NCBI RefSeq assembly: GCF_006345805.1
Contig: NW_021832392.1
Coordinates: 3,815-67,814, forward strand
DNA length: 64,000 nt
Direction of reading: 5' to 3'
DNA from: Octopus sinensis
Taxonomy: Eukaryota
A program made the position numbers and the translations under genes. A model generated the notes under the pieces. It had not been told where the DNA came from and searched no databases. It saw only the letters and a program-made list of their open reading frames with translations. Below, in pieces: positions 11,994 to 57,808 of the stretch. How positions within the stretch are numbered: position 1 is the stretch's first letter; each line of letters starts with the position of its first letter.

Positions 11994-14229
11994 TCACTGG
12001 AATACTTCTGTATATACGATGTTCCTAGCTATCCGTTTGGGCGAAAACATGAAAACATCATTGCGCCTCCCAACGCGTGAACAGCCCACGTAGAGTTGAC
12101 CGTGGGCGAAGCACTGTTCGCCCAAATGTAACCCAGCGACTTGTAGCGTTTGGCCTTGGGATTTATTGATGGACATTGCGAAGCAGAGTTTAACAGGAAA
12201 CTGAGAACGCCTGAAGTGGATTGAAGGTGCATCCGTGGAATGAAGACGTCCTCTCCATTCCCACAACCGGTAAGTATTGTGGCCGTTATTAAATGTGGTG
12301 CCAATGTTTCACACACCAAACGTGTGCCGTTGCACTGTTTAGGTGGAACCAAATTCCTGATGAGCATAATGGCGCACCGACTTTTAACTTCAGGATGTGT
12401 GGTGGCAGGCCTGGCGGTTCAAGTGAATTCAGGAATTCAACAGGATAATCGGCAAGCTGGGCGGGGTCTGCTGTCCTATCTATAGATTTGTAACGTGGAC
12501 ATCACCAGGAATAGCTTCAAGTAGCTGGACATTGATGAGGTGACGGTTGTATTTTTGGGTGCGAGAATAGCTCTGCCTGCCAGCCATTTTAGGTCGCGTA
12601 AATTGTTTTGTAGGTCGTGGAAGACAGCGTCCCGGAGGCTAACAGGGGTGTCGACAATGGTGCAAAGTGAGTCCAATTGAACGTAGCCATCCGCATCAGA
12701 CAGCATCCTATTTTCACCGAGCGATAAGAGGTCCCTGGAGAATGCAGCGGATCCGCTGTCACCAATTAACTGCGCGCGCATGTTAGTTTGGAGGTGCAAG
12801 GGCCGCACATGTGCCCAAAGAGCTGACGACTTAAGGCACGCGAACACGGCATCGGCACGGGTTCCTTTTGGAATAACAGTTAGAGTCTGCCTGAAGTCTC
12901 CTGAAAGAAGTAAAGTTAATCCTCCCATGGGGGCCGTAGAGTCTCTGATGTCTTGCAGGGACCTGTCCAGTGCCTCAAGGGCGCCTTTGTGTGCCATAGT
13001 GCACTCGTCCCATACGATGAGTTTGCATCTGCGCAGAATGTCGGCATGTTCTGAGTTCTTGGCGATGTTGCAGATAGGTGACTCGGACTTTGCCAGATCG
13101 AGCGGGAGTCTGAAGGCAGAGTGGGCGGTTCTGGCACCGGAAGCAACGTGCCGCGATACCAGAGGAAGCTACAGCCAGGGCAATGTCCGTGTTGCGTCTG
13201 ACCTCTGCCAATTAGTTTAGTGACGAAGGTTTTGCCAGTGCCGCCGGGTGCATCAAGGAAGAAAATCCCTCCACGTTGCTGTCTGACAGAGTCTACGATG
13301 GTGTTGTAGGCTATGCGCTGGTCTGGAAGCAGCCGTGGTTCATTATCTTGGACGTACTGGTGCAGTTCCTCAATGCAGTAGGAAGTTTCGCGTAACAATT
13401 CAGCAGACATAACATTGGCGTGTTCACGTGTGGGTGGTGGAAGGCCGTACTCTGTTAAAGCAGACCCACCCATATCGATGACAGCGTCTTCGAGTTGAAT
13501 TAGCGCAAAATTGTAAATGAAGTTGGTGAACGTGATCTCGGCGGAAGGGCAGTGTTGCAGAGCCGTACGTAAGAAGTCGTGCGACATGTCATCCCTGTAT
13601 TTCATCCAGAGACTTAGTGGATCACTAAGCTGACATTTTTGAAGAAGGATTGCGAAAAGATGTCGTAGGGCCGAATGCGTTTGCAGTAAAGCGCCCTCTG
13701 CCATCGTGGCGTCCCACTGGGAGTCATCCTCTAGAAGGTCAAGTCTCATACATGCTTCCCTGAAGGTGTCGCACAGAACCCCATTGATGGTACGTATATT
13801 GGCGAAACCTGTTGGACCATTGACCTCATGTAGAAGGAGACGGAGGTAGAAGCACTCTTGCTGGTTTGGCGGGATGTTGTAAACTCGACCCAGGCAGAAG
13901 TCAAACTTGACGCCTGGGAAGCCTTCGACGTTTTTGCCGGATTTCCGTCGAACCCAGTGTTTTTTTTAGACCACACGAAGTACGATGGGACCTGTGGGTA
14001 CAAAAGCGTTCGAGCGAAGTCATCACGTTGGCATAATTTGAAGAAACCAGTCAACGTTGTGTCTTTAGGGCTGGTGGCTATCTGCACAGCACTTTGCTCT
14101 GTGAAGTAAATCCGCTGTCCATTTTCCAAGTGTACAGCAAGCTGCACCACAGCCGGGTGTCTCTGATGGAGCGGGAAGCCGTAAATGCGCCAAAACGCTT
14201 CGTTGCTGCTGAGGTACCGGCCAGCCAAG
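11994..14229 (-). pseudogene. Helitron RepHel C-terminal part: Pif1-family SF1 helicase, frameshifted
   Basis: Motifs include LAGRYLSSNEAFWRI, FFLDAPGGTGKT (Walker A), LLLSGDFRQ, NGTRL, QFPVKLCFAMSINKSQGQT and HGQLYVGCSRV, spread over several frames. Confidence 0.92.
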
Positions 14230-14234
<5 letters not shown>

Positions 14235-14275
<41 letters not shown>

Positions 14276-15893
14276 ATTTGGCTCAAAAGCAAATAGCAAG
14301 GCCATGTAGGGGGACATGGAGTTAAGTACAGGGTGGTGTTCATGTAAAGAGTTCAGGCCACTTGAGGTCCAGGGAGGCTCTGAACAAAGCGGTCGTCGGC
14401 ATCTTCACCATCTCGTCTGGCAGCTTGTTCCACGGATCCGCAACCCGGACGGAGAAAGCTCCTCTCCTTCGATTGAGATGAAATCGTCGCAGGTAGAGCT
14501 TTTCGGAATGACCCCGCAGCCGACGCTCCGGAGCAGGAGTGAAGAACAGCTCTTTCGAGAGGTTACACTTCCCGCTTATGATGTTGTGGGCGAGAATGAG
14601 ATCACCACGGCGGCGGCGGCGTTTTTCAAGAGAATAAAGGTCGAGCGTCCTCCTCAGCCTTTCTTCGTAGGACAAATTTTTGAGACCATGAACCATGCGG
14701 GTAGCCAGCCTCTGGACTCTTTCGAGATGCTGTATGTCTTTGAGAAGATAAGGAGAAGAGGCTTGAATCCCATACTCCAATATGGGTCTCACCAGCGTGA
14801 CATAGAGTGGCAGGAATATGGCTGCTGTGAGCATTCCGAATGACCGTCGAATCAAAAACAGAATTCCGCGCGCTTTGTTGGCAGCATGGAAGGCACTGGG
14901 CCGAAGGCGATAAGGAGGAATCCACCAAGATACCCAGGTCCTTTACCTGATCGGTCCTCTCCAGCAGCAGACGACCCGGCTCGAAATCAAGTTGAGTTGC
15001 AGGAGTAGAGCCGACAGGCAGATGACAGCACTTTGACACGTTCAGACACAGGTCCCAATCGTTAGACCACTTCCAAATTTGGTGGAGGCATCGACGAAGA
15101 TCCTATATACTACCGCGAGGAGCGACCAGTTTGATATCGTCGGCAAATAGAAGGGTGTGTTGCGTGAGGTCGTCGGGCAAGTCATTTATGAAGACTAAGA
15201 ACAACAAGAGCCCAAGCACTGAACCTTGAGGCACGCCACTGCTCGCACTGGAGACGTCGGACCGCGAACCATTAACTTGAACTTGGAAGGAGTGATCTGA
15301 GAGGAAGGCACCAACCCATCGTACAATATCCGGATGGAAACTATATGCTCGGTGGTTTACCGAGTCAAAAGCTTTGGCAAAGTCCAATAAAACGATGTCA
15401 ACAGCATCACTATCATCGAGGATGCACGTCACCAATTCTTCCATTACTAGTAAGTTGGTCAAGCATGATCTCTTCGGCACGAAGCCGTGTTGGGAATCAG
15501 TGATCGAGGCTGTGTTTAGGAGGTGGAGCATCATACTTTTCTTAAGGATGGTTTCGAACATCTTGCTGATTATTGATGTAAGGGAAACCGGTCGGTAGTT
15601 AAGCGGGTCTTCGCGGCTCCCTTTCTTGAAAATTGGCAGATTATCGCTGTTCTCCAGTCTGCAGGTATAACACCCGTCGCCAATGACATATTGAATAGTC
15701 GTGTTAAGGGCTCGCAGATGACCGGAGCCAACGCTTTGATAACCGTGGGTGTATGCCATAAGGGCCGTGACCCTTGTTGACATCGATGCCTTGGATAACA
15801 CGTTTGACTTCGTCCGCGTGATGATCAATCGAAGCATTGGAGGTACCGATCTATCAAATGGAGGGGGTTCACGACCATCATCTTGTTTGAAAA
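14235..15893 (-). mobile_element. 5'-truncated CR1-type LINE inserted into the Helitron
   Basis: RT motifs NYRPVSLTS, LDFAKAFDSV, GVPQGSVLG and FADD; CR1-type C-terminus LYSLEKRR..RGDLI and WNKLP; (CTAA)n tail at 14231-14276. Confidence 0.9.
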
Positions 15894-15898
15894 TAGTT

Positions 15899-18514
15899 GG
15901 ACACTTCGTCGCGACTGGTGGTCCTCTGGATGCTGAACATGGCAACATCGCTGCCTTTGTTGATATATTTGCAGACATATTGTATTGACCTGATGGAGCT
16001 GCAGAACTCAACGTTGACGTGGGCTTTGAATATCTTCGACAGGAGAGGACAGTAGGGGACAATGTAGCTGTTGTCCACTTGATGTCGCCCAACCGTAATC
16101 GTGCGGCCTCCATTGGCTCGACTCCTTCGTTTGTACAGCGGATACCCATCGCCGCCTGTTTGAGTCTCCAAAGTGAACCGTTTAGGGAATCCCTCCTTTG
16201 AGCAGGCTAATCCGTTTTTGTAGCATGGTGTGTTGGCGTAATTTGGTCCACAGGGCCCGTGTACCATGGTAGTGCGGACAATTTCGTAGAGTCCGGGGTC
16301 CTCATCGGGGTCAGGAATCTCGGCGGAAATGAATTTGTCAATGTCATTAGTCTCGATTTTATGAGTGAGCCAAATTAAGACGTGAGCATGTGGCAAGCCC
16401 CTCTTTTGCCACTCGACCGAAAACGTGGCACCTGACATGCCCGAAAATCTGACCCTTAACTATCAAATCCTTAATTTTGCCCAAATTCAGACGGAAAACC
16501 CTAGCAACGATGTCGTGTCGATGGGTGTGAGATTGACCCGGGAGGAGTTCGCGAGTGATTTCGTCGCAGCTGGGATTGCACGTGTAGGTGATAAAGAGGT
16601 CCGGCCGGCCGTAAATGCGCACGTAGGTCAAGGCGTCTTGGGTCCTTTCACGCATATATCGCGGTCGTCCCGTGAAGGTGGAGGGTAGAATGCATGGCTT
16701 GCCGATGTTGCGAGGGTCATTTTCTTGTTGCAAACCGTCACGGAGATGAATGTAGGAGTCGGAGCGAAGTTTGGTCTGATTAAGTTTAATGTATAGCAGC
16801 CTTTCCGATTCCATTTTTGCGGCCATGTCGACGGCGAACTGGTTGAATAGCTGACGACAACGGGGCAATAAGCTGAACTCACCCTCCCTGACCATGAACC
16901 GATATGAGTAGAACGCCCTGCAGGAAACCGTCTTTGATGCCGCAGTAGTTTGATTGGAGGGCTGCCGTAAAGGAATTCCGAAGTGGTAGCCGTCTTCACC
17001 ATAAGGGAAAAGCAATGGATACTGAAGCGCGTCATAAGATCTGTGAGTCTCGCTGATCCTGTGTAGGTTGTTACCACGGGAGGAGATGATTATGTCACGG
17101 CTGTTGTGCCGCTCTCCGTGTATGACTGCGGCAATTTCGTTGCACGCAGGTGCGTTGAAACGGCGTTCGTGCTCCCCGTGGGGTCGTTTATCAGCATCAA
17201 TGACAACGGTGAAGTTTGGAGATGGAACACTGTCCAAGACATATCTGAAGCTGCAGACGTAGCTGTTGATATCATGAAGCATGGTTTGGAGACGGAGAAG
17301 AATGTCTTTGCGGCGGGGAACATAGCTTGTACCCGGTATTATTCCAAGGCGTGCATCAACCTGGTGGTTGTAGTCGGCAATGAAGTATATTTGGAGGAAA
17401 GAAGACTGCTGGATCTCGTCTGGCAGAAGTGACCCAATAAGATGGTAGACCTGTCCCTGCACTTTGAAAGTAGGCATCCAGCCTTCTCTGGGAGGAATTT
17501 TGGCCCCGAAAGAGGTCATTTGGAATGAGCAGTTGTACTTTCGAATTATTTCAAGGAATTGTGACGATTCGGGGGTTAAACCCGCCGCGAGATCCTTCAG
17601 TGGTTGAGGTGGTTCCCGTAGGGGTGGCAGGTCCACTTTGCCACCAGAGCAGCAGCACAAACCAGGTGGCTCTCCGGGCCATTTCTTGGCTTTGCAAAAC
17701 TGGCATACAATTCTCATTGACCCTATCTTGATGTCGTCACGCAAGGAGAAGTTAATTGTGGCGTCGTAGTTGAATGCTATAGTGACAACCAGAAAGCGGG
17801 GGAAGGGGTACGTACACCAAGAATGATATCCCGACGTTTGTTGATACTCTCAAGTCGAGTGCACCGTGCCTCAGCAGATTCAGATGCACGTGCGACAGCG
17901 GTAGCAGTGGCATCCCTTGAAAGCCTTTCAGCTCTCGCCTCAGCACCCTCTGAAGCCCTAGCAGAAGCAGTGTTAATGGCCTGTCTGGATGTCCGAATAT
18001 TTCGTTGGTGCGGAGTTTCGGCAGATCGAGCCCTGGCTGTGTTTGCGGCGTTAGCAGCTTGGCGAGCTCTCCTCTGTTGAGGTGTTTCGGCAGCTTGGGC
18101 TATGGCTTTGTTTGCGGCGTCAGCATCTTGGCGAGTTCTCCTCTGCTGTGAGGTTTCGACAGATCGTGTCCTGGCGGTGCTAGTGGCGTTAGCCGCATTC
18201 CGAATGGCCCTTCTTTGTTCGGGGTTCTCGCGAGCTCTGCGGATGGAAGCACAGTAAGAAGCCCGCATGTTTTGGCTGGACTGTTGCTCTTTCGTCAACC
18301 TCGAGCGGAGGGAAGATCTGTACGCTGCGACCCTTGCAAGTCGGGTAGAACGGTCGCTAGTAGTTTCAGATGCCTGAGCAGCGGCATAACGGGAAGCTGT
18401 TTGCGAGAAGCGCAAGGCGGTTTCCTCGTGGGTCTCGCGTGCCCTTCTAGCCCTAGCAGCCGATGCCTTGGCCGTCCGAGGGCTGAGGAGGGTCCTTCTC
18501 TTCTTGGGTGGCAT
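15899..18514 (-). pseudogene. Helitron RepHel N-terminal part: MPPKKRR start, 23-aa repeats, Cys-rich finger, HUH Rep domain
   Basis: ATG at 18514, then CQFCKAKKW...CCCSGGKV, Rep motifs VEWQKRGLPHAH and YVCKYINKG. Frameshifts lie near 17790 and 16430. Confidence 0.9.
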
Positions 18515-18634
18515 TTTGGTGGATAGCAATGTGTTTGGCAAAGGTGTAATAAAAAGGAACACGTGGGGTAAGTATTTTGGTGGATAGCAATGTGTTTGGT
18601 AAAGGTGTAATAAAAAGGAGCTCGTGGGGTAAGT
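18513..18634. repeat. Two 61-bp direct repeats just upstream of the Helitron ATG
   Basis: ATTTTGGTGGATAGCAATGTGTTTGG(C/T)AAAGGTGTAATAAAAAGGA occurs at 18513 and 18574. Confidence 0.85.
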
Positions 18635-19736
18635 ATCCGAAAATGTATAAAAATGTACAAAAACGGCCAAAAAGCGGGTAGCAATGTGAGTGACAACAAC
18701 GAAAAAGTCAAAAGTGATCAAACTGAACAAACGAAAGGAAAAGTTTTTTTGATGCACACGACAAAAGTGGTTTATAATAAACCAAGAGTTTGCAAGTAGC
18801 GTCCGAGGACCGTTAGGGTACGTCAAAAATTGAAGGTAAAACGTTTGGGGTGGTAGTTATAAAGAAAGTTTAAACAAAAAAAGTATTCGAATAACTTGCG
18901 GCTGCAGCAGCTATTAGCAGAAGTGGCGGTGTTGGGGGTAAAGTCTCGAATGTAATTTCTTCCTGGTAGGAATTGGTTGGATCGAATTATCGATAGCTAA
19001 CAAGGTCAAGTTGCGTCCCCTAGGCAGTCTGGTTTGTGTTTAATACACAAATTTGTTTGCTATGTGTGCCACATATGATTAAATTAACCGATTTTTTCCA
19101 ATAATGTATCCTATTGGAATAAAAAGGGCTATATAGCTCCTTGGAGCAGACATGATGCTCGTTGTGAAAAAAAAAAAAAAATTCCTGCCAATTTGCGAAA
19201 GATATTGTCGAAAATATGTCATCTTGAATTTGAACGCGATTTCCCAAAATGGCATGATTTTATCGACTGTTTCTGATGGTAGGGTATTGCATGGAAAACT
19301 AACTTCAGAATTGAGTTTCTTAGGGTAACATTAAGCTTCACCATGAGTTTGGTGAAAATCGATTGCAAGTTGTGAAAACTACCATAGATAATGCGTTGCA
19401 TAAAAAAAGGTTAGATTCTCGAGTTGCGTCCCCTAGATAGTCTGTGGTTCGTGTTTCTGATTCTCGACCCCATGTCGAATTTATCAATTTTTTTCAGAAC
19501 TGGGGGAACTTTTCAAAATTTTCGCTACGTTAGTTTTGAATTATGACATTGGGCTATGTGTGTGTCAAGTTTCATCAGAATCGGTTGAAAGCCGTGGTCA
19601 GAGTGAGGGTACGAGAAAACAGACACACAGAAACACGCACAGACAAACTGCCGTTTATATATATTATATATATAATTATATATATATAATATATATATAT
19701 ATATTATATTATATATATATATATATATACATATAT

Positions 19737-27170: not shown

Positions 27171-27212
<42 letters not shown>

Positions 27213-27299
27213 ATACATATACAACATGAGAAAATGGAGAAATACATCTAATCATTAATCATTATCAGATAATACTTTATTAAACCCTGTCTCAATTTG

Positions 27300-27342
<43 letters not shown>

Positions 27343-28421: not shown

Positions 28422-28728
28422 ACACATATATATACATTTCAAAATAGAAAATTGCCCATTAACAGGTAATTTTTACATGCTAGAAATAGCAGCCAAACTT
28501 TGCCACGATCCTTCATTTTCTAGCAAATTTTCAAGTCCATGAAAAATAAAAACCTTTATCTAGTTAAATATCTTGTTAAATATATACAACTACATATATA
28601 TATATACACACACACACAATATATATATATATATATACATACTTATGGAGAAATACATCTAAATCAAATATCAATTATCAGATAATACTTTATTAAACCC
28701 TATATCAATTTGTATATATATATACATA

Positions 28729-28782
<54 letters not shown>

Positions 28783-28880
28783 GGGCAAAGGAAAATCCTT
28801 CATTTTCTAGCAAATTTTCAAGTCCATGAAAAATAAAAACCTTTATCTAGTTAAATATCTTGTTAAATATATACAACTAC

Positions 28881-28917
<37 letters not shown>

Positions 28918-28939
28918 AGTATATATATATATACATACT

Positions 28940-28977
<38 letters not shown>

Positions 28978-29066
28978 CAAGATGAGAAAATGGAGAAATA
29001 CATCTAAATCAAATATCAATTATCAGATAATACTTTATTAAACCCTATATCAATTTGTATATATAT

Positions 29067-29111
<45 letters not shown>

Positions 29112-29114
<3 letters not shown>

Positions 29115-29291
29115 GGGCAAAGGAAAATGATTGCGTCTCTCATAGCCTCTCCTCTCCAGGTGTAATGATCGCTGCAGAACTTCTACCTGGCTGCGCCTTG
29201 CGGAAAGTTCTTGCTTATGGCCTCTCCTGCACTACTGTGTCCACAGCAGCACCTTCACGCGGTACCCCCTGTTCTCACTGAGCCTGCTGTG
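29112..29291 (+). ncRNA. Putative HDV-like (CPEB3-type) self-cleaving ribozyme at the RTE 5' end
   Basis: P1 GGGGGGC 29112-18 / ACCCCCT 29264-70; P2 CACAGCAG(C) 29242-50 / (G)(C)CTGCTGTG 29282-91; P3 ACC/GGT; L3 TTCACGC; GT after P1; J4/2 CTGA 29278-81. Confidence 0.75.
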
Positions 29292-29852
29292 TGGCGCGAC
29301 CGGGTGCTTGGCGGTATAACCGGGTGGGCAGACTGGGCTCGTTAGCCTTGGTTGACAGCCAGTCTAGGAGAAGGAAAACTCTGACTCCAAACCCTCGCTC
29401 CGCTGCCTTGCGGATGCTCTTGGGAGAGGGAAAGGCTATGGGAGTAAACCCAGACAGAAAATCCGGAGTGGAGCCCTGAAGGCGGTAGGGTGTCGAATCT
29501 CGACCCTTTTCCGGCAACTCCTGCAGCCAACCAGACTCCAAACGTACTGCACTGCATTCCTTTGGATTATGTCTGGGGGCCCGAGAGGGAGATTCTGGTG
29601 TCTGGGCAGCCCAGTGTCTTCGTTCCTACCGCCCAGGCTTGCGCCATGGAGAAACTACTCCATCGATGGAACAAGCTGAGATGGCAGTTACGAGTTTTAA
29701 GCCAGGGTGAATTGGCGTAATCCCGGGCGCTACGGGTCTCTAACGGTGGGAGGGATCATTGAAGTCCCACTGGTCAGCTACCGCCCGCCGTAAGCTGGGC
29801 AGCCCCCGGCCAATAATGGTGCTAAGCCGCCACAGACTGCCCGCTTCAATGG

Positions 29853-32800
29853 GTGCTTGGAGCTAGGACAAAATCTGAAAAGCAGACTGAAAACCCTGCA
29901 CCAGCAAACAAAGGAAAAACAAATACCCAGTCTCCAGTCTTGCGACTGGCCACCTGGAATGTCAGGACCATGTGCCCTGGCATCATTGACGATCTACGAC
30001 AGATGAACGACAGTAGGAAGACAGCAGTCATCAACACCGAATTGAAAAGGCTGAACATCGACATAGCGGCGCTGCAAGAGACCAGGCTCGCCGCAGACGG
30101 CATGCTACGGGAGAAGGACTACACCTTCTACTGGCAGGGGAGACCCGTCGAGGAGGCCCGCCAGCATGGCGTGGGGTTTGCCGTGAGGAACAGCTTGCTC
30201 CCCATGGCGATCCCTCCTTCAAATGGCTCAGAGCGCATCCTCACTCTTGGCCTTGCAACATCAACGGGGAAGGTAAACATAATTAGTGCTTATGCCCCAA
30301 CACTCCACTCTCCTCAGAAAATAAAAGACCGGGTCTATGAGGAGCTCGGCGCCACCATCAGCCAGATACCAGGGTCGGAGCCCATCTTCCTTCTGGGCGA
30401 CTTCAACGCAAGGGTGGGATGATTCGATCATGGGGCATGGCCAGACTGCCTTGGACGCTTTGGCGTGGGGAAGATGAATGAGAATGGCCAGAGACTGTTG
30501 GAGCTTTGCTCTTACCGGAAACTCTGCGTTACCAACACATTCTTCACGACTAAGCCACAACACCGGGTCTCATGGAGGCACCCAAGGTCCGGACACTGGC
30601 ACCAACTGGACATGGTCATCACCCGGCGAGCCCACCTCGGCAGTGTGCTTCTCACACGCAGCTACCATGGTGCTGACTGTGATACAGACCACTCTCTGGT
30701 GTGCAGTAGGGTCCGATTGGCCCCAAAGAAAATCCGCCGTCCCGTAGGGAAAAGCCGCCCACGCATCAACACCGCCAGGACAACCAACCCCGACCTCCGC
30801 TCGGAATTCACCAACCGCATGGAGGAGGCCCTTAAAGATCACGCAGCCACGTCCATCGAGGAGAGATGGCAGCTTATTCGCGACACCACTTGCAGAATAG
30901 TCATGTCATCCCTAGGAAAGAGGGAGCGGAGAAATCAAGACTGGTTTGAGGCTCACCTGCCTGAGATGGAGCCTGTCATTGCTGCCAAGAGGGAAGCACT
31001 GGTCAACTATAAGCGCGACCCATCAGAAAAGAACCTGGCTACTCTAAGAACAGCCAGAAGTGACGCCCAGAGGACGGCCAGACGTTGCGCCAACATCTAC
31101 TGGCAGAACCTATGCCAGAACATCCAGTGCTGTGCTGACAGTGGTAACGTGAAAGGGATGTACGAGGGGATGAAGAAAGCATTCAGGCCCACTGTCAGCA
31201 AGGTTGCTTTACTGAAGGACCAAGCGAAGCAGATAGAGAGGTGGGTCGAGCATTACCAGAACCTCTACTCCACTGAGAATGTGGTCACCAGGTCTGCCCT
31301 CGCCGGCATTCCTGCTCTGCCTGTCATGGAGGAGCTTGACCTGCCTCCAACAAAGGAAGAACTGAGCAAAGCAATTGACTCACTCGCTCGGGGCAAGGCA
31401 CCAGGGCAAGACGGCATCCCCGCAGAAGTCATCCAGTGCGGGAAGCCAGCCCTTCTGGGCCATCTCCACGAGCTGCTCTGTCAGTGCTGGGCGGAGGGCT
31501 CTGTCCCTAAGGATATGCGTGACGCAAACATCATCACACTGTATAAAAACAAAGGGGACAGAAGCGACTGTAATAATTACAAGGGCATATCCCTGCTCAG
31601 CACTGTCGGTAAGGCATTTGCCAGGGTGGTCCTGAAGAGGTTGCAAATGCTTGCAGAGCGTGTGTACCCCGAGTCTCAGTCTGGCTTTAGGGCAGAGAGG
31701 TCTACAATCGACATGATCTTCTCACTCAGGCAGCTTCAAGAAAAGAGTCGAGAACAGAGACAGCCCCTATACGTGGCCTTCATCGACCTGGCTAAGGCGT
31801 TCGACTCAGTCAGCAGGGAGGGGCTGTTTGCGCTCCTGGGTAGGATATGTTGCCCTCCCAGACTGCTGAAACTCATCACCTCCTTTCACGATACGGTATG
31901 CAGGGAACAGTGCAGTTTGACGGATTGCCCTCGGAGTCGTTCGCCATCCAGAGTGGAGTGAAACAGGGTTGCCTTCTGGCGCCGACGCTCTTCGGAATTT
32001 TCTTCTCCCTTGTCCTGTCCTATGCCTTCAGAACGTCCGACGACGGAGTGTTCCTCCACACCAGGGCTGATGGTGGGTTGTTCAATCTTGCGCGCCTCAG
32101 AGCTAAGACCAAAGTCCGTCAGGTGCTGATCAGAGAGATCCTCTTTGCTGACGATGCCGCCCTAACATCACACAACCAGCCGGGTCTCCAGAGGCTGTTC
32201 AGCTCCCTGGCGGATGCCTGCCAAGAGTTCGGCCTTACCATCGGCCTGAAAAAGACAGAGATCATGGGCCAGGACGTCGGAGGGGTCCCCAGCATCAGTG
32301 TCGGCGACCACAGCTTGCAGGTGGTGAACGAGTTCACTTACCTGGGATCGACGGTCTCCAGCAGCCTGTCCCTCGAGCCGGAGCTGAACAGACGGATTGG
32401 GAGGGCTGCTGCTGCTGCCATGGCTAAGCTCTCCAGGAGAGTGTGGGAAAACAACATGCTCACAATAACCACCAAGATCGCAGTGTACCGAGCCTGCGTG
32501 CTGAGCACCCTACTCTACGGCAGCGAGAGCTGGACAACATACACCCGGCAGGAATGCCGCCTCAGCGGCTTCCACATGCGGTGTCTTCGACGGATCCTTG
32601 GCATCTCCTGGAAGGACCGAGTACCAAACGGAGTCATCCTGGAACAGACTAATATGCCAAGCATGCATGCCCTCCTCGTGCGGAGACGACTGCGCTGGCT
32701 CGGACACGTCTGCCGCATGCAGGACGGTCGCATGCCTAAAGACATCCTGTACAGCAAACTCACCACGGGATCCCGACCCAAGGGACGTCCACAGCTACGA

Positions 32801-33079
32801 TACAGGGATGTGTGCAAGCGCGACCTGAGGACTGCCAACATCTGTGTGGACACGTGGGAGGTAACAGCTGCTGACCGCTCTGCCTGGCATCGGACAGTGA
32901 GGAAAGGCGTTTCCATGGCTGAGGAAAGGAGAGCACAGCCGTGGTCGGACAGGCGGAGGACAACTGCAGCAACACCCCACACGTACCCATCGATGTTCGT
33001 GTGCAGCAACTGTACCAGGGACTGCCACTCTAGAATTGGACTGTTCAGTCACAGCAGACGCAGCACATCATCAAAGTAG
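29853..33079 (+). pseudogene. RTE polyprotein (AP endonuclease, reverse transcriptase, C-terminal Cys/His finger)
   Basis: Motifs are ATWNVRT, ALQETR, LGDFNARVG, DTDH, FIDLAKAFDSV, KQGCLLAPTLF, LFADD and CSNCTRDCHSRIGLFSH. Lesions are an in-frame TGA at 30420-30422 and a 2-nt insertion at ~31893. Confidence 0.93.
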
Positions 33080-33265
33080 GCCCCACACTTGGCGCAACCC
33101 ATTGTCTATCAAGACAGACGGGGAGAAGAGAAGAGATATATATACATACATATACAACATGAGAAAATGGAGAAATACTTTATTACACCCTATATCAATT
33201 TGTATATATATACATATTATATATATATATATTATAATTTATTTATATATATATATATATTATAT

Positions 33266-33296
<31 letters not shown>

Positions 33297-33366
33297 TTAT
33301 TTATAATATATATATATATATATATATATTATTTATATATTATATATATATATATATTTATTTATA

Positions 33367-33428
<62 letters not shown>

Positions 33429-34820
33429 CAGTTACGCAATGGGGTCGATATAATCGCCTTAATCCGTATGTCTGTCTTTGTTTGTCCCCTCTGTTTTTAG
33501 CCTCTTGTGGGTAGTAAAGAAATAGCTATTTCATCTGCCGCTACGCTCTGAGTTCAAATTCCGCCGAGGTCGACTTTGCCTGCTATTTCTAGCATATGGA
33601 CAGCCTTCTTGAAGGCCTGATCGATTTGCTTGACTAAATGCGGTGCTCCAGCATGGCCACAGTCAAATGACTGAAACAAGTAAAATAAAAGAACATATAT
33701 ATATATATATGTTTTGATTTTCCTTGTTTCAGTCATTTGACTGTGGCCATGCTGGAGCACCGCATTTAGTCGAGCAAATCAATCCCAAGACATTATTTTT
33801 AACCCTAGCGGTTCTTGTCAAGCGATGTTGGAGGGGGGAGGGGGGTAAACAGACACACACACTCACACACACATATATGTATACATTTATATACGATGGG
33901 CTTCTTTCAGTTTCCATCAACTAAATCTATTCATACATACACACACACAAACACACACACATATGTGTGTTTTCATTTCTGTGTCTGCGTGCGCGCGTGT
34001 TTCCAGTTCATTACTTGTACGTGTGTGTGTGTGTGTGTGTGTGTGTGTTGTGTGTGTGCGCGCGCTAGTGTATGCGTGTGAGCGTGTGTGTGTGAGTGTG
34101 TAACTGTGTATTTTCCTTTTTTTTGTGTGTGTGTGTGGTGTTTGTCCGTATGCATGTGTGCATGTGTGAGTGTGAGTGTGTGTGAGTATTTTCATTTCAG
34201 TGTGTATGTGTGACTGTTTTTATTTATGTGTGCGTGTGTATTTTCGTTTCTGTGTGTGAGTGTTTGAGTGTGTAACTGTGCATTTTCAATTTTGTGTGTG
34301 TATGCTTGTGGGCGTTTGTGTGTGTGTCGTTACGCACGCACTGGTGTCGAAAGGCACAAACGCACACATACACACACACAATTGAAAATACAGTCACACA
34401 CGCACACACCTTTTCCCTGAGTTGCTTAGCAACGGGTAATAATAGAGAAGAATAGTTTTATATTGAGAGAGAGAGAGAAACTTATATGTTGTATAGTGAG
34501 TTAAATACAGACAGACAGACAGACAGAGAGAGGTAGACAGAGAGAGAGGGGTAGACAGAGAGAGAGAAGAAGGCCTTAAGTACTGATGAAATTAAATGGC
34601 GTGAGTGGGGTGGGTCAGCAAAAGATACAGAAAATTCAGGTATCCTGTCAACAGAAACTTTGCATTTCCAATTCTGTCTCAGATACAATCTAACTTTACA
34701 ATGGCAAACGAAATGAAATGTATATTTCAAGTCAGCGATAATCGGAAGATTTTAAAAATACACGCAGACAAACACACACACACACACACACACGCACACA
34801 CACACACACACACGCACACA

Positions 34821-34853: not shown

Positions 34854-35333
34854 TTGAAAATACAGTCACACACGCACACACCTTTTCCCTGAGTTGCTTA
34901 GCAACGGGTAATAATAGAGAAAAATAGTTTTATATTGAGAGAGAGAGAAACTTATGTTAGATAGTGAGTTAAATACAGACAGAGAGAGAGTTTAAAAGAC
35001 AGAGAGAGAGAGAGAGAGAGAGACATACATATGTACATAGATACATATATATATATATATATTTATATATATAGATATATAGATATATAGATATATTTAT
35101 ATATATTTAAATATATATATATATATATATGTATGTATATTTCAAAATAGAAAATTACCCTTTAACAGGCAATTTTTACATGCTAGAAATAGCAGCAAAG
35201 ATTGCTACGATCCATTATTTTCTGGCAAATTTTGAAGTACATGAAAAATAAAGACCTTTATTTTTTTATATATGTATATATATATACATCTACATATATA
35301 TATATACACACACACACATATGTATAGATATAT

Positions 35334-35401
<68 letters not shown>

Positions 35402-35478
35402 CATAATATATAAATATATATATATAAATATAATATATATATATAATATATATATATATATAAATACATAATATATAA

Positions 35479-35511
<33 letters not shown>

Positions 35512-35534
35512 ATATATAATATACATAAATTATA

Positions 35535-35720: not shown

Positions 35721-36300
35721 TATATATAGGCGCAGGAGTGGCTGTGTGGTAAGTAGCTTGTCTACCAACCACATGGTTGCGGGTTCAGTCCCACTGAGTG
35801 TGTATTTGTGTGTCTGTGTTTGTCCCCTAGCATTGCTTGACAACCGATGCTGGTGTGCTTATGTCCCCGATCGGCAAGAGAGACCGATAGAATAAGTACT
35901 GGGATTGCAAAAGAATAAGTCCCGGGGTCGAGTTGTTCGACTAATGGCGGTGCTCCAGCATGGCCGCAGTCAAATGACTGAAACAAGTAAAAGAAAAGAA
36001 TAAAAGAATATATATATGTACCAGTTTCGCACTAGGGTCGATGTAATCGACTTAATCCCTTTGTCTGTCCTTGTTTGTCCCCTCTATGTTTAGCCCCTTG
36101 TGGGTAGTAAATATATAGATATATAGATATTTCAAAATAGAAAATTACGCTTTAACAGGTAATCTCTACATGCTAGAAGTAGCAACAAAATCTTGGCACG
36201 ATCCATTATTTTCTGGCAAATTTTGAAGTCCATGAAAAATAAAAATCTTTATCTTGTTTTATATATATATATATATATATATACATCTACATATATATAT

Positions 36301-36352
<52 letters not shown>

Positions 36353-36354
36353 GT

Positions 36355-38265
36355 ACCAGTTACGCACTGGAGTCGATATAATCGCCGTATGTCTGTCCTT
36401 GTTTGTCCCCTCTGTGTTTAGCCTCTTGTGAGTAGTAAAGAAATAGGTATTTTGTCTGCCGCTACGTTCTGTGTTCAAATTCCCCCGAGGTCGACCTTGC
36501 TTTTCATTCTTTCGGGGTCGATTAAATAAGTACCAGTTACGCACTGCGGTCAATATAATCGACTTAATACTTATGTCTGTCGTTGCTTGTCTTCTCGGTG
36601 TTTAGCCCCTTGCGGGTAGTAAAGAAATTGGTATGTTGTCTGCCACTACGGTCTGAGTTCAAATTCCGCCGAGGTCGACTTTGACTTCCATCCTTCGGGG
36701 TCGATAAATTAAGTACCAGTTACTACGCACTGGGGTCATTATAATCGATTTAATCCGTTTGTCTGTCCTTGTTTTTCCCCCCTGTGTTTAGCCCCTTGTG
36801 GGTAGTAAAGAAATAGGTATTTCGTCTGCCGCTACCCTACCCACACGCACACACACCACACACACACACACCACACACACACACACATATATATATATAT
36901 AAATAAATAAGTACGGTGTTTAGCCCATTGTCGCTACTGTCTGAGTTCAAATTCCGCCGAGGTCGACTTTGCCTTTCATCCTTCGGGGTCGATAAATTAA
37001 CATATACACAAAGACAGACAGACACACACACACACGCACATACATACATACATACATACATAGAAACATACATACATACATACATACATACTTACATACA
37101 TACATAAGTCAGAGAGAGAGTGCCGCTACATTGTTGCTCAGTATCCTAGAAATAGCAACCAAATCACCCTGTGATTACCTAACCCTTGTACATAGATGAT
37201 AGTTGTGATTATCCCAGTCGTATTACCTGCTCATTTACGGCTGTCAGAGTTAGACAATAATTAATTTACTACACAGCTGTAATCGATGTAATCGACTTAA
37301 TCCCTTTGTCTGTCCTTGTTTGTCCCCTCTGTGTGTAGCCCCTTGTGGTAGTAAAGAAATAGGTATTTCGTCTGCTGTTATGTTCTGAGTTCAAATTTCG
37401 CCGAGGTCGACTTTACCTAGTCATTGCAGGGTCGATAAATAAAGTACCAGTTGCGCACTGGAGTCGATGTAATCGACTTAATCCCTTTGTCTGTCCTTGT
37501 TTGTCCCCTCTGTGTGTAGCCCCTTGTGGGTAGTAAAGAAATAGTTATTTCGTCTGCTATTACGTTCTGAGTTCAAGTTCCACCGAGGTCGACTTTGCCG
37601 TTCATCATTTCAGGGTCGATAAATAAAGTACCAGTTTCGCACTGGAGTCGATGTAATCGACTTAATCCCTTTGTCTGTCCTTGTTTGTCCCCTCTGTGTT
37701 TAGCCACTTGTGGGTAGTAAAGAAATAGGTATTTCGTCTGTCGTTCCGTTCTGAGTTCAAATTCCGCCGAGGTCGACTTTACCTTTCATCATTTCAGGGT
37801 CGATAATTTGGGTACCAGTTACGCACTGGGGTCGATGTAATCGACTTAATCCGTTTGTCTGTCCCCTCTGTGTTTAGCCCCTTGTGGGTAGTAAAGAAAT
37901 AGGTATATTACGTCTGCGGTTACGTCCTGAGTTCAAATTCCGCCGACGTCGACTTTGCCTCTCATCATTTCAGGGTCGATAAATAAAGTACCAGTTACGC
38001 ACTGGGGTCGATATAATCGCCTTAATCAGTATGTCTGTCATTGTTTGTCCCCTGTGCGTTTAGCCCCTTGTGGGTAGTTAAGAAATAGGTATTTTGTCTG
38101 CCGCTCCGCTCTGAGTTCAAATTCCGCCGAGGTCGGCCTTGCTTTTCATTCGTTCGGGGTCGATTATAAAAGTACCAGTTACGCACTGGGGTCAATATAA
38201 TCGACTTAATACCTTTGTCTGTCTTTGTTTGTCTTCTGGGTGTTTAGCTCATTGTGGGTGATAAA
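36355..38265 (+). repeat. Head-to-tail arrays of a ~180-bp 5'-truncated SINE with a Meta-domain-like core (36355-36835; 37285-38265)
   Basis: The unit is GGTATTTCGTCTGCCGCTACGTTCTGAGTTCAAATTCC (B-box) GCCGAGGTCGACTTTGCCTTTCATCCTTCGGGGTCGATAAATTAAGTACCAG...GTAGTAAAGAAATA. TACCAG recurs at ~37446, 37629, 37813, 37989 and 38173. Confidence 0.85.
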
Positions 38266-54508: not shown

Positions 54509-54858
54509 TATATATATTTATATATTTATATATATGTTCTTTTATTTAACTTGTTTCAGTCATTTGTCTGTGGCCATACTGGAGCACTGCCTTTAGTCGA
54601 GCAAATCGACCCCAAGACTTATTCTTTTTAAGCCTTTCGTTTCTTGCCGAGCCGCTAATTGACGGGGATGTAAACACCCCAGCATCGGTTGTCAAGTGAT
54701 GTGGGGGGGGGGGACAAACAGACACACACACTCACACACATATATATATGTATATATATTTATATACGATGGGCTTCTTTCAGTTTCCATCTACTAAATC
54801 TATTCATACACATACACACATATATGTGTGTATATGTATATATATATGTATGTATATG

Positions 54859-54889
<31 letters not shown>

Positions 54890-54968
54890 ATGTATATATA
54901 TATATGTATATGTATATATATATATGTATGTATGTATATATATATATATGTATGTATTGTATATATAT

Positions 54969-55002
<34 letters not shown>

Positions 55003-55398
55003 GTATATTATATATATATATATAATGTATATATATATGTAATGTATATATATGTAATGTATATATATATGTAATGTATATATATATATGTATATGTATA
55101 TATTATATATGTATATATATATTGTATATATATATAATATGTATATGTATATTATATATATGTATATGTATATATATATATGTATTGTATATATATATAT
55201 ATGTATGTATATATATATGTATGTATATATATATATATATGTATGTATATGTATATATATATATGTATGTATATGTATATATATATGTATGTATATGTAT
55301 ATATATATATGTATGTATATGTATATATATATATGTATGATATATATATATATGTATATATATATGTATGTATAGTATATATATATATATAATGTATG

Positions 55399-55429
<31 letters not shown>

Positions 55430-55496
55430 GTATGTATATGTATATATTATATATATGTATGTTATGTATATGTATATATATATATATATATGTATG

Positions 55497-55528
<32 letters not shown>

Positions 55529-56632
55529 TATGTATATATATATATATATGTATGTTATGTATATATATATATATGTATGTTATGTATATATATATATATG
55601 TATGTTATGTATATTATATATATATGTAATGTATATATATATATATTGTATGTATATGTATATATATATATATATGTATGTATATGTATATATATATATA
55701 TATGTATGTATGTTATATATATATATATATATGTATGTATATGTATATATATATATATGTATGTATATGTATATATATATATATATGTATGTATATGTTA
55801 TATATATATATGTATGTATATGTATATTATATATATATGTATGTATATGTATATATATATATATATGTATGTATGTATATATATATATAGTATGTATATA
55901 TATATTATGTATGTATATGATATATATATATATATATGTATGTATAATGTATATATATATGTATGTATATATATATATATGTATGTATATATAATATATA
56001 TATATATATATGTATATATATGTATATGTATATATATATGTATATGTATTATATATGTATATGTTATATATATGTATGTATATGTATATAATATGTATAT
56101 GTATATATATATATATATATATATGTAATGTATATATATATATATATATATGTATGTATATGTATATATATATATATGTATGATATGTATATATATATAT
56201 ATATTATGTATATATGTATATATAATATATGTATGTATATATATATATGTATGTATATGTATATATATATATATGTATGTATATATATATATATATGTAT
56301 GTATATATATTATATATATATATGTATGTATATAATATATATATTATATATATATATGTTATATATGTATATGTATGTATATGTATATTATATATATGTA
56401 TATGTAATATATGTATATGTATATATGTATGTATATGTATATATAGTATATATATGTATATATATTATATATGTATATATAATATATATATATGTATATA
56501 TGTATATATATATGTATTATGTATATATATATATATGTATAATGTATATATATGTATATATATATATATATGTATATGTATATATATATATGTATATATG
56601 TATATGTATATATATGTATATGTATGTATATG

Positions 56633-56681
<49 letters not shown>

Positions 56682-57368
56682 GTATGTATATGTATATATA
56701 TATATATATGTATATATGTATATGTATATGTATGTATATGTATATATATGTATATGTATATATATGTATATGTATATATATGTATATGTATGTATATGTA
56801 TGTATATGTATATGTATGTATATGTACGAACACATTTGCGAACACACACTGACGCTCGACTTTCCATCACTCAACAGATAAGGTAAATTGATTTTGTAAT
56901 TTACTTTTTGTCGCTAAATTTTGGTAGCGTACGTTCTTGAAAAATGGAAATTTTACACAATTTTTCCTGAATCCTCATCTTTCACTTAACTGAAAAAAAA
57001 AAACAAAATCTGCATTTTTTCACTTTTTCCAGAATTTTCTCTTCTTACTTATTTCTTTATTTTCTATTTAATTCTTATTATTTTTTTGGGTGTGGGCCAA
57101 ATACGTAAAATATACAAAGATTTGAACTCTGATAGAAATTTCCGAGGTGGCACCTCGGGTAAGTGATTTGTTTCAGTCATTTGCCTGTGGCCATGCTGGA
57201 GCACTGCCTTTAGTCGAGCAAATCGACACCAGGACTTATATTTTGTAAGCCTATTGCTTATTCTATCGTTCTTTATTTGCCGAACCGCTAATTAAGTTAT
57301 GTTATCGTAGTTTTGTTAACTTTGGCTGCTATTTCTAGCATATAGATAGCCTGCTTGAAGGCCTGAAT

Positions 57369-57410
<42 letters not shown>

Positions 57411-57777
57411 ATATGATATATATATATATATATTATATATATTATATATATATGTTCTTTTATTTAACTTGTTTCAGTCATTTGTCTGTGGCCATACTGG
57501 AGCACTGCCTTTAGTCGAGCAAATCGACCCCAAGACTTATTCTTTTTAAGCCTTTCGTTTCTTGCCGAGCCGCTAATTGACGGGGATGTAAACACCCCAG
57601 CATCGGTTGTCAAGTGATGTGGGGGGGGGGACAAACAGACACACACACTCACACACATATATATATGTATATATATTTATATACGATGGGCTTCTTTCAG
57701 TTTCCATCTACTAAATCTATTCATACACATACACACATATATGTGTGTATATGTATATATATATATGTATGTATATG

Positions 57778-57808
<31 letters not shown>

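What the first reader, a model, noticed from the sequence alone, without database searches (positions are those of the whole stretch)
29112..29291. CPEB3/HDV-like ribozyme fold beginning at the exact first base of the RTE retrotransposon
Seen in sequence: all elements of the nested double pseudoknot occur in the right order. P1 is GGGGGGC/ACCCCCT with a G1.U wobble and a top C.A mismatch. P2 is CACAGCAGC with GC(C)TGCTGTG, carrying one bulge. P3 is ACC/GGT, L3 is TTCACGC, GT follows P1, and J4/2 is CTGA with the candidate catalytic C at 29278. J1/2 is long (~123 nt) and P4 is reduced to TCTCA. G1 coincides with the junction between genomic (AT)n and the element. Established: HDV-like ribozymes process the 5' ends of R2 and RTE elements, and human CPEB3 has L3 UUCACGU, the same C.A mismatch and GU after P1. 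Inference: this octopod-type RTE self-cleaves to define its 5' end, using an unusual nearly P4-less, long-J1/2 variant.
Basis: partly seen in the sequence, partly recalled or inferred. Interest (0 to 1): 0.82.

Follow-up and report, generated by a model that had tools for sequence, protein, structure and literature searches.

The report
HDV-like ribozyme heading an octopus RTE
The first 180 bases of an Octopus sinensis RTE jumping gene fold into a stripped-down HDV-type self-cutting RNA whose cut site is the element's first base; this is a good new example of a known device, and cutting itself is untested.

Summary
The window is Octopus sinensis scaffold VCDQ01005821.1. Four independent insertions of this RTE family have different flanks and their own target-site duplications, and all begin at the G-run (GGGGGGC, window 29112), give or take 1-2 nt.

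Related RTEs from marine metagenomes carry a homologous 5' module:
- P1, P2 and P3 are kept through compensatory changes: 92% of cells are paired, against 34-47% when the partners are slid, and 13 of 22 pairs change on both sides.
- The L3 loop keeps the HDV-type pattern YYCNCGN.
- A C lies 6 nt before the 3' strand of P2 in 6 of 7 sequences.
- P4 is replaced by 4-6 nt.
- J1/2 runs from about 24 to 280 nt.

Other RTE lineages in the same set carry HDV-like folds with a P4 stem upstream of the ORF.

So the fold is real and HDV-like. Cleavage itself is inferred, not shown.

The design is not unprecedented:
- HDV-like ribozymes in RTEs were reported in 2011.
- Silkmoth R2 ribozymes have no P4 and a J1/2 of 216-498 nt, and they cleave at 1-25%.
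- An abalone ribozyme has 5 nt in place of P4.

The likeness to CPEB3 is resemblance only, not membership. Rfam finds nothing here, but it also misses the P4-bearing relatives. Verdict: a new member of a known kind, of moderate interest.

The parts
29112..29118 (+). P1 5' strand GGGGGGC. The predicted cleavage site is immediately 5' of G29112, which is also the first base of the RTE.
   Evidence: The 5' ends of independent copies and their TSDs are. P1 covaries in relatives.
29119..29241 (+). J1/2, 123 nt. Its length varies among relatives from about 24 to 280 nt. It contains the conserved AAGG motif after P1 and the GCCTCTCC motif before P2.
   Evidence: Folded alone it is not unusually stable (z = +0.24).
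29242..29249 (+). P2 5' strand CACAGCAG.
29250..29250 (+). Single C between P2 and P3.
   Evidence: Relatives do not keep this pair.
29251..29253 (+). P3 5' strand ACC.
29254..29260 (+). L3 TTCACGC. T1 and G6 are the candidate metal-binding wobble. C3 pairs with G29271 to form P1.1.
   Evidence: One search shows the YYCNCGN pattern across RTE relatives. The CPEB3 positions U20.G25 and C22 are described in PMC4836649.
29261..29263 (+). P3 3' strand GGT.
29264..29270 (+). P1 3' strand ACCCCCT.
29271..29272 (+). GT, the 3' half of P1.1 (G-C plus U.U, as described for CPEB3).
   Evidence: The C-G pair is invariant in 7 of 7 sequences.
29273..29277 (+). TCTCA, a 5-nt linker where P4 normally sits.
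   Evidence: Relatives have 4-6 nt here.
29278..29278 (+). Candidate catalytic cytosine.
   Evidence: A C lies 6 nt before P2' in 6 of 7 aligned sequences, and 5 nt before it in L036 (alignment A3, column 51).
29279..29283 (+). Rest of J4/2 (TGAGC).
29284..29291 (+). P2 3' strand CTGCTGTG.
29112..33135 (+). Whole RTE-type non-LTR retrotransposon copy, about 4.0 kb, ending in a GA-rich tail.
29853..33079 (+). APE endonuclease plus reverse transcriptase coding region, broken into three frames (29853-30422, 30465-31961, 31847-33079). This copy is not protein-competent.
   Evidence: Exo_endo_phos, RVT_1.
28780..28796 (+). Stray copy of the first 17 nt of the RTE, carried upstream by a host tandem duplication (28497-28796 / 28797-29128).

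Best explanation
Window 29112-29291 encodes an HDV-like (nested double-pseudoknot) self-cleaving ribozyme. It forms the 5' end of an Octopus sinensis RTE-type retrotransposon family.

Proposed mechanism:
1. The element is transcribed as part of a longer read-through RNA (inferred).
2. Once P2' (29284-29291) has been made, P1 (29112-18 with 29264-70), P2, P3 and P1.1 can form (shown by covariation).
3. C29278 in J4/2 and a Mg2+ ion held by the L3 U.G pair cleave the backbone just 5' of G29112 (inferred from the HDV and CPEB3 mechanism).
4. The released RNA starts with a 5'-OH at exactly the element's first base. It is the template for target-primed reverse transcription.

This would explain why full-length copies all start at the G-run. 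The ribozyme is a minimal form: 5 nt stand in place of P4, J1/2 is a 123-nt insert, and a C.A mismatch tops P1. By analogy with silkmoth R2 it is likely to be a slow or partial cleaver in vitro.
For: Sequence elements are present in the right order.

The 5' end is fixed. Four independent insertions start at the G-run: window/L001, L003, L004 and L089. For L003, L004 and L089 a TSD abuts it within 0-2 nt; the window copy lies in (AT)n, so its TSD cannot be delimited.

A homologous 5' module exists in related RTEs L007, L036, L037 and L022/L079.
- P2 changes from CACAGCAG/CTGCTGTG to CATAGCAG/CTGCTATG, GGATAGCT/AGCTATCC, CCACCACAC/GTGTGGTGG and CTGTGC/GCACAG.
- P1 changes from GGGGGGC/ACCCCCT to GGGGGGT/ACCCCCT, GGGTGT/ACACCT and GTGGCGT/ACGCCAC.
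- P3 changes from ACC/GGT to GCC/GGC.

Pair counts: 91.9% of cells are paired, against 34-47% with slid partners. 13 of 22 pairs change on both sides. 0 of 500 shuffles reach the observed values.

Conserved core positions:
- The P1.1 C-G pair is invariant.
- A C lies 6 nt before P2' in 6 of 7 sequences.
- P2' lies 12-14 nt after P1' in every lineage.
- In L007 the G-run sits at the switch from AT-rich flank to GC-rich element. In L036 it abuts a (TGTA)n array.

Other RTE lineages in the same set (L017, L018, L023, L038, L071, L008, L074) show HDV-like folds with a P4 stem, the same L3 pattern and a GCUAA-type J4/2, upstream of the ORF.

Anchored shuffle test: 28 of 3000 for structure alone, 0 of 3000 with the L3 pattern added.

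P2 and P3 form in the unconstrained minimum-energy fold of the window copy.

Literature:
- HDV-like ribozymes sit in RTE and Baggins elements (PMC6765202).
- Cleavage at the element junction is reported for RTE (PMC3774820).
- P4-less, long-J1/2 R2 ribozymes cleave in vitro (PMC3774820).
Against: - There is no direct evidence of cleavage.
- No Rfam family is hit at gathering or E-value thresholds. However, Rfam also missed the P4-bearing relatives.
- J1/2 folded alone is no more stable than shuffles (z = +0.24). Published work (PMC4908430) finds that long linkers without a stable closing domain cleave slowly.
- P1 has a C.A mismatch.
- The G-run can instead pair with the conserved GCCUCUC at 29219-29225, and that pairing wins in the pseudoknot-free minimum-energy fold.
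- Octopus copies are about 96% identical, so they add no covariation. L003 carries A29243C, which breaks one P2 pair.
- The covariation alignment was registered by hand around the conserved L3 hairpin, which biases it towards the structure. It has only 7 rows from about 5 lineages.
- Some close protein relatives (L087, L088, L054) do not keep a convincing P1'.
- This particular copy has a broken ORF.
Confidence: 0.72

Rival explanations
1. Relic fold. The module descends from an HDV-like ribozyme but no longer cleaves in this octopus family, because P4 is lost, P1 has a C.A mismatch and J1/2 is long and weakly structured. On this view the uniform 5' end comes from an internal promoter or transcription start at G1. 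The conserved pairings would then serve another role, such as translation initiation or protein binding.
For: - J1/2 is not unusually stable.
- A competing pairing exists between the G-run and GCCUCUC.
- The B. mori P4-less R2 ribozyme cleaves only about 1% in vitro (PMC3774820).
- Any full-length LINE family has a uniform 5' end, whatever the mechanism.
Against: - P1 is a long-range pairing of the terminal 7 nt with the strand next to P3. It is kept by compensatory change across lineages. That is hard to explain unless the HDV fold itself is under selection.
- The catalytic-position C and the L3 pattern are conserved.
- Other P4-less R2 ribozymes reach 25% cleavage.
Confidence: 0.2
2. Chance resemblance. 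A G-run that happens to begin the element, and a C-run downstream, mimic P1. The other helices are short and arise easily in a GC-rich UTR.
For: A loose descriptor finds dozens of pseudo-HDV arrangements in 900 nt. The anchored structure-only test still gives about 1% of shuffles.
Against: - 0 of 3000 shuffles match once the L3 pattern is required.
- Homologous modules in at least 4 other RTE lineages keep the pairings with different sequences.
- P2' sits at a fixed distance in all lineages.
Confidence: 0.03
3. The G-run is host DNA and the RTE really starts at 29129. This was suggested by the second copy of GGGGGGCAAAGGAAAAT at 28780-28796, which is followed by host sequence.
For: One search finds two exact copies of the 17-mer. 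The upstream copy continues into the host repeat unit.
Against: - Independent copies on three other chromosomes start with the same G-run directly after their TSDs.
- Paralogous host units lack the 17-mer.
- The join at 28796/28797 is not the native host sequence, because 'ccttcatttt' is normally preceded by 'ttgccacgat'.
Confidence: 0.01

Closest known systems
HDV-like ribozymes at the 5' ends of RTE and Baggins non-LTR retrotransposons (Ruminski, Webb, Riccitelli and Luptak 2011, as summarised in PMC6765202 and PMC3774820; drz-Agam-2 family, PMC4908430)
   Same: - The same element clade and the same position, with P1 starting at the element's first base.
- The same proposed role: freeing the element RNA from a read-through transcript.
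- A large J1/2 insert, as in drz-Agam-2-1.
   Different: - No P4 stem here.
- J1/2 shows no clearly stable closing domain.
- The host is a cephalopod.
- I could not read the primary 2011 paper, so I cannot say whether a mollusc RTE ribozyme of this exact type is already listed there.
Silkmoth (Bombycoidea) R2 ribozymes (Eickbush and Eickbush 2013, PMC3774820)
   Same: - No P4 stem and a very long J1/2 (216-498 nt there, 123 nt here and 280 nt in L007).
- Conserved P1.1/P3/L3 block.
- Only a C, and little else, is conserved between P1.1 and P2'.
- Measured self-cleavage of 1-25%.
   Different: - R2 is a different clade and is specific to 28S rDNA.
- Its P1 5' strand lies in the 28S gene upstream of the element. 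Here P1 starts at the element's own first base.
Abalone (Haliotis discus) HDV-like ribozyme with 5 nt in place of P4 (Webb and Luptak 2011, cited in PMC3774820)
   Same: A mollusc ribozyme with exactly 5 nt replacing P4, like TCTCA here.
   Different: Its sequence and genomic context were not available to me, so any relation to this RTE lineage is untested.
Mammalian CPEB3 ribozyme (Rfam RF00622; PMC4836649)
   Same: - G1.U wobble at the cleavage site.
- A C.A mismatch at the top of P1 in the human allele (A30).
- L3 UUCACG.
- P1.1 made of one G-C pair plus U.U, with GU after P1.
   Different: - CPEB3 has an 18-nt P4 hairpin, almost no J1/2 and a 4-nt J4/2.
- It lies in an intron of a mammalian gene.
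- The Rfam model does not hit here.
- Relatives of the octopus module vary at the 'CPEB3-like' positions, so the likeness is convergence within the HDV-like consensus.

Membership tests
HDV-like self-cleaving ribozymes | Nested double pseudoknot in the order P1-5', J1/2, P2-5', P3-5', L3, P3-3', P1-3', P1.1, (P4), J4/2, P2-3' | tested here: met
   One search gives the coordinates. An anchored descriptor hit is found.
HDV-like self-cleaving ribozymes | Helices supported by compensatory changes in homologues | tested here: met
   91.9% of cells paired against 34-47% when slid. Pairs with changes on both sides: P1 4 of 7, P2 8 of 10, P3 1 of 3. The alignment was registered by hand and has 7 rows.
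HDV-like self-cleaving ribozymes | L3 with a 5' pyrimidine and a G at position 6 (metal-binding wobble), and a C that pairs with the G after P1 (P1.1) | tested here: met
   L3 is TTCACGC followed by GT. The YYCNCGN pattern is shared with the relatives, and the P1.1 C-G pair is kept in 7 of 7 sequences. Roles of the positions are taken from PMC4836649.
HDV-like self-cleaving ribozymes | Catalytic cytosine in J4/2 | tested here: inconclusive
   C29278 aligns with a C in 6 of 7 homologues. Its catalytic role cannot be shown from sequence.
HDV-like self-cleaving ribozymes | P4 helix stacking under P1/P1.1 | tested here: not met
   Only TCTCA lies between P1.1 and C29278. An alternative 3-bp mini-stem CTC/GAG is not kept in L007 or L036. 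P4 is stabilising but not required (PMC3774820), so this does not exclude membership.
HDV-like self-cleaving ribozymes | Mg2+-dependent site-specific self-scission 5' of P1, giving a 2',3'-cyclic phosphate and a 5'-OH | not testable with these tools
   This needs transcription and cleavage assays.
HDV-like self-cleaving ribozymes | Match to a curated Rfam HDV-like model | tested here: not met
   No hit. The test is weak, because the same models missed the P4-bearing ribozyme-like folds in relatives L017, L023, L038 and others.
CPEB3 ribozyme family (RF00622) | Sequence and structure match to the family model, and location in a CPEB3 intron | tested here: not met
   No RF00622 hit at E <= 10 on 29000-29400. 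The context here is the 5' end of a retrotransposon.
RTE-clade non-LTR retrotransposon | Single ORF with an N-terminal APE endonuclease and a reverse transcriptase, target-site duplications, and a short repeat tail rather than poly(A) | tested here: met
   - Exo_endo_phos and RVT_1 domains.
- TSDs of 10-11 bp in L003, L004 and L089.
- GA-rich tail.
- Formal phylogenetic placement in the RTE clade was not done.

The most novel reading that the evidence does not exclude
This P4-less, long-J1/2 module may be the 5' processing device of the RTE lineage reported as transcribed in octopus brain neurons (RTE-2_OV in O. vulgaris, PMC9115989). That element has a similar size, a UTR of about 600 nt, a zinc finger and a microsatellite tail. 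If so, much of the 'LINE expression' seen in the octopus brain would be host read-through transcription trimmed by a ribozyme rather than promoter-driven transcription. The same minimal ribozyme type would also be shared by RTEs across several marine animal phyla.
Probability: 0.25. Interest if true: 0.55.

Novelty: new member of a known kind. Interest (0 to 1): 0.4.

Why it matters
- It appears to be the first described case in a cephalopod. A search of the held literature for octopus, ribozyme and retrotransposon found no paper reporting a ribozyme in an octopus RTE.
- It shows that the minimal architecture (no P4, long J1/2) occurs in RTEs as well as in silkmoth R2. Several marine RTE lineages in the metagenome set carry it.
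- If the ribozyme is active, these elements need no promoter of their own. That changes how transcription of RTEs in octopus tissues should be read.
- It also provides a compact, naturally P4-less HDV-like core (50 nt from P2 to P2', plus a remote 7-nt P1 strand) for studying how distant P1 strands are recruited.

Tried and rejected
- **Rfam scans.** The window at gathering threshold, 29000-29400 at E <= 10, and 13 relatives' loci at E <= 1 gave no HDV-family hit. This is uninformative, because P4-bearing relatives are also missed.
- **Loose descriptor.** Allowing J1/2 up to 250 nt and one P1 mismatch gave far too many chance hits. I replaced it with an anchored test.
- **G-run as host DNA.** The idea that the element starts at 29129 is rejected by independent copies and by the paralogous host units.
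- **Alternative mini-P4.** CTC 29274-76 / GAG 29280-82 with C29283 or C29284 as the catalytic base is rejected. The stem and that C are not kept in L007 or L036, whereas C29278 is.
- **Alternative far P2' or P4.** A pairing of TGAGCC 29279-84 with GGCTCG 29336-41 has no support from relatives.
- **A stable J1/2 closing domain.** None was found (z = +0.24). Only a weak AGGA/UCCU pairing between the conserved AAGG and CCUCUCC motifs is possible.
- **Closest protein relatives.** The oyster locus L087 and ENA contig L088 have disrupted or different 5' modules and gave nothing usable. L054 is similar, with no upstream complement to its P1'.
- **Covariance model of the P2-P3 core (R1).** It found no further strong members among 87 sources and only one hit in the window.
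- **Octopus transcript contigs.** A search with the N-terminal ORF, meant to map RNA 5' ends, found only another genomic copy.
- **Primary papers.** Ruminski 2011, Webb 2009 and Webb and Luptak 2011 are not held in the library.

Full report
**1. What is in the sequence**

- P1: GGGGGGC (29112-29118) can pair with ACCCCCT (29264-29270). This gives a G.T wobble at the first pair, five G-C pairs and a C.A mismatch at the top.
- P2: CACAGCAG (29242-29249) pairs with CTGCTGTG (29284-29291).
- P3 and L3: ACC/GGT (29251-53 / 29261-63) enclose the 7-nt loop TTCACGC.
- GT follows P1'. Five bases, TCTCA, stand where P4 would be.
- C29278 is followed by TGAGC and then P2'.
- J1/2 is 123 nt.

Downstream lie an APE endonuclease and reverse transcriptase coding region in three broken frames (29853-30422, 30465-31961, 31847-33079). 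The element ends in a GA-rich tail at 33135.

**2. Is G29112 really the element's first base?**

This was not obvious. The 17-mer GGGGGGCAAAGGAAAAT occurs twice: at 29112, followed by RTE sequence, and at 28780, followed by host sequence. The host DNA here is a nest of repeats.

The paralogous host units at 27204-27340, 35129-35518 and 36119-36360 lack the 17-mer. In them, 'ccttcatttt' is natively preceded by 'ttgccacgat'. The join at 28796/28797 is therefore secondary.

Other copies gave the decisive evidence. A protein search and look-ups gave three results.
- The window is Octopus sinensis scaffold VCDQ01005821.1 (L006, 100% identical).
- A near-identical duplicate locus, L001, shares the flanks and is not independent.
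- Full-length copies lie on other chromosomes.

L003, L004 and L089 have unrelated 5' flanks and start at the same G-run. Their target-site duplications abut it:
- L004: ATATAAATAT, plus one extra t.
- L003: TATGTATATAT, plus one or two A's, with the first G read as A.
- L089: ATATACATAT.

L002 and L005 are 5'-truncated copies.

The upstream 17-mer is a host tandem duplication (28497-28796 / 28797-29128) that took in the first 17 nt of the element.

**3. Is the fold more than chance?**

Order of elements alone is weak evidence. A permissive descriptor finds dozens of pseudo-HDV arrangements in 900 nt.

With P1 fixed to the element's first seven bases, I required an adjacent P3 hairpin with a 7-nt loop and a Watson-Crick P2 of at least 8 bp. 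This appears in 28 of 3000 dinucleotide shuffles. Adding the L3 pattern YYCNCGN leaves 0 of 3000.

Rfam gives no HDV-family hit. It also gives none on relatives that have textbook-looking P4-bearing HDV-like folds. The negative result therefore carries little weight.

**4. Comparative evidence**

A scan of metagenome contigs with an alignment of the closest RT proteins returned 80 RTE-like loci. Searching them for the P3-L3-P3' motif, for homology to the octopus UTR and with a refined descriptor gave two groups.

(a) Homologues of the octopus module that also lack P4:
- **L007.** P1 is GGGGGGT, at the switch from AT-rich flank to GC-rich element. J1/2 is 280 nt and includes a closed stem insertion. 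P2 is CCATAGCAG/CTGCTATGG. L3 is TTCCCGT.
- **L036.** P1 is GGGTGT/ACACCT, next to a (TGTA)n array. J1/2 is a 41-nt hairpin. P2 is GGATAGCT/AGCTATCC. L3 is TTCACGT.
- **L037.** P2 is CCACCACAC/GTGTGGTGG. P3 is GCC/GGC. P1 is shortened.
- **L022/L079.** P1 is GTGGCGT/ACGCCAC. P2 is CTGTGC/GCACAG. P3 is GCC/GGC. GG follows P1 and pairs with CC in L3.

(b) Lineages with an ordinary P4 stem and a GCUAA-type J4/2 upstream of the ORF: L017, L018, L023, L038, L071, L008 and L074.

In group (a), P2' always starts 12-14 nt after P1', and 4-6 nt replace P4.

I placed seven sequences in register by padding and counted pairs for the full double pseudoknot.
- 91.9% of cells are standard pairs, against 34-47% when the 3' partners are slid by 1-3 columns.
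- 13 of 22 pairs show changes on both sides: P1 4 of 7, P2 8 of 10, P3 1 of 3.
- No shuffle out of 500 reaches the observed values.
- The P1.1 C-G pair is invariant.
- The C aligned with C29278 is present in 6 of 7 rows (column 51). In L036 it is one position later.

Caveats: the register was set by hand around the conserved L3 hairpin, there are only about five lineages, and the octopus copies themselves are too similar (about 96%) to add information. L003 even carries A29243C, which breaks one P2 pair.

A covariance model of the P2-P3 core found exactly one site in the window (29238-29294). It found no further strong members.

**5. Points against strong activity**

- J1/2 folded alone is no more stable than shuffled sequence (z = +0.24).
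- Published work on drz-Agam-2-1 shows that a stable J1/2 domain and short linkers speed cleavage nearly 1000-fold by 'pinching' P1 and P2 together, and that long floppy linkers are slow (PMC4908430).
- In pseudoknot-free minimum-energy folds of the octopus and L007 RNAs, the G-run pairs with a conserved GCCUCUC just upstream of P2. This is a possible competing helix.
- P1 has a C.A mismatch.
- Some of the closest protein relatives (L087, L088, L054) have disrupted modules or lack a complement to P1'.
- This copy's ORF is broken, so at best it is a passenger that keeps an intact ribozyme sequence identical to L004 and L089.

**6. Mechanism proposed**

- Shown: the pairings, their conservation, and the coincidence of P1's first base with the insertion boundary.
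- Inferred: the element is transcribed within longer host RNAs. The double pseudoknot forms once P2' is made. C29278 and a Mg2+ ion positioned by the L3 U.G pair cleave 5' of G29112. The 5'-OH RNA is then reverse-transcribed to its end, giving uniform full-length 5' junctions.

The main rival is that the fold is a no-longer-catalytic descendant and the 5' end is set by transcription initiation. Compensatory maintenance of the long-range P1 argues against this but does not exclude it.

**7. Comparison with what is known**

- HDV-like ribozymes in RTE and Baggins elements, and cleavage at the element junction, are established (PMC6765202; PMC3774820).
[quoted passage not shown] An abalone HDV-like ribozyme has 'only 5 nucleotides instead of a P4 stem' (PMC3774820).
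- The CPEB3 likeness is accurate as a description, checked against PMC4836649: G1.U36, A30 in the human allele, U20.G25, C22 in P1.1, and U.U. It does not make this a CPEB3-family member.
- No paper in the held library links an octopus RTE to a ribozyme.
- The paper on the brain-expressed O. vulgaris RTE-2_OV does not contain the word 'ribozyme'. That element has an ORF of 3327 nt, UTRs of about 600 nt, a zinc finger and a microsatellite tail. This is similar to the element here, but identity could not be tested.

**8. Verdict**

Catalysis is untested. The finding is a new member of a known kind: an HDV-like ribozyme at an RTE 5' end, of the minimal type with no P4 and a long J1/2. Interest is moderate.

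Noticed in passing
window 28497-29128 (17-mer at 28780-28796): A host tandem duplication of about 300-330 bp has its right edge 17 nt inside the RTE. A stray copy of the element's first 17 bases (GGGGGGCAAAGGAAAAT) therefore sits 332 bp upstream, followed by host sequence. The duplication happened after the insertion.
   Followed up: yes
L001 (CM016873.1, 67882235-67901367) against window 29046-33300: A second locus at the very end of a chromosome-scale scaffold matches the window copy and its flanks at about 98%. It is probably a haplotig or a recent segmental duplicate of the unplaced scaffold the window comes from.
   Followed up: partly
window 29396-29860: The 3' two-thirds of the 740-nt 5' UTR has no ORF of 80 aa or more. 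Yet it is conserved at the nucleotide level with RTEs whose proteins are only about 55-70% identical by tblastn (L007, L008, L074, L080, L088, L087). Long identical blocks include CCAAACGTACTGCACTGCATTCCTTTGGAT and GGTCAGCTACCGCCCGCC. This suggests a second conserved RNA element, possibly for translation or protein binding.
   Followed up: partly
window 29141-29150 and 29218-29226; also in L007, L008, L070, L087, L037: The motif AGCCTCTCC recurs 15-25 nt upstream of P2 in many RTE lineages, including those with a P4-bearing ribozyme. It can pair with the terminal G-run (a possible alternative P1) or with the AAGG that follows P1.
   Followed up: partly
window 33136-33420 against 28950-29111 and 27204-27338: The 3' flank of the RTE begins with another copy of the host unit that ends in (AT)n just before the 5' junction. 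The surrounding host DNA is a roughly 2-kb tandem array (27135-28297 matches 33224-34406 at 89%). The TSD of this copy therefore cannot be delimited within (AT)n.
   Followed up: partly
L028, L029, L030, L031, L083 (minus strand of each locus): A conserved motif TGG TCCGCGR CTG CTTATTC GT, with the look of a P3-L3-P3'-P1' block, lies in antisense orientation upstream of the RTE ORF in several related metagenome contigs. It may belong to a neighbouring element or be chance.
   Followed up: no
L036 4-52 and 4325-4372: This metagenome RTE contig is bounded on both sides by (TGTA)n. That fits either insertion into a microsatellite or generation of one by the element.
   Followed up: no
window 1678-3777 (+), 12916-18826 (-), 54820-60621: Other repeats in the window:
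- A second APE/RT LINE ORF at 1678-3777.
- Helitron-like (Helitron_like_N, PIF1) fragments with a nested RT ORF on the minus strand at 12916-18826.
- A 5.8-kb AT-rich low-complexity array at 54820-60621, with GC about 0.10 and GC skew 1.0 in the windows inside it.
   Followed up: partly
window 32990-33079: The C-terminus of the RTE protein carries a CxxC...HxxxxxxH zinc-finger-like motif (FVCSNCTRDCHSRIGLFSHSRR). This is reminiscent of the C2H2 finger reported for O. vulgaris RTE-2_OV.
   Followed up: no
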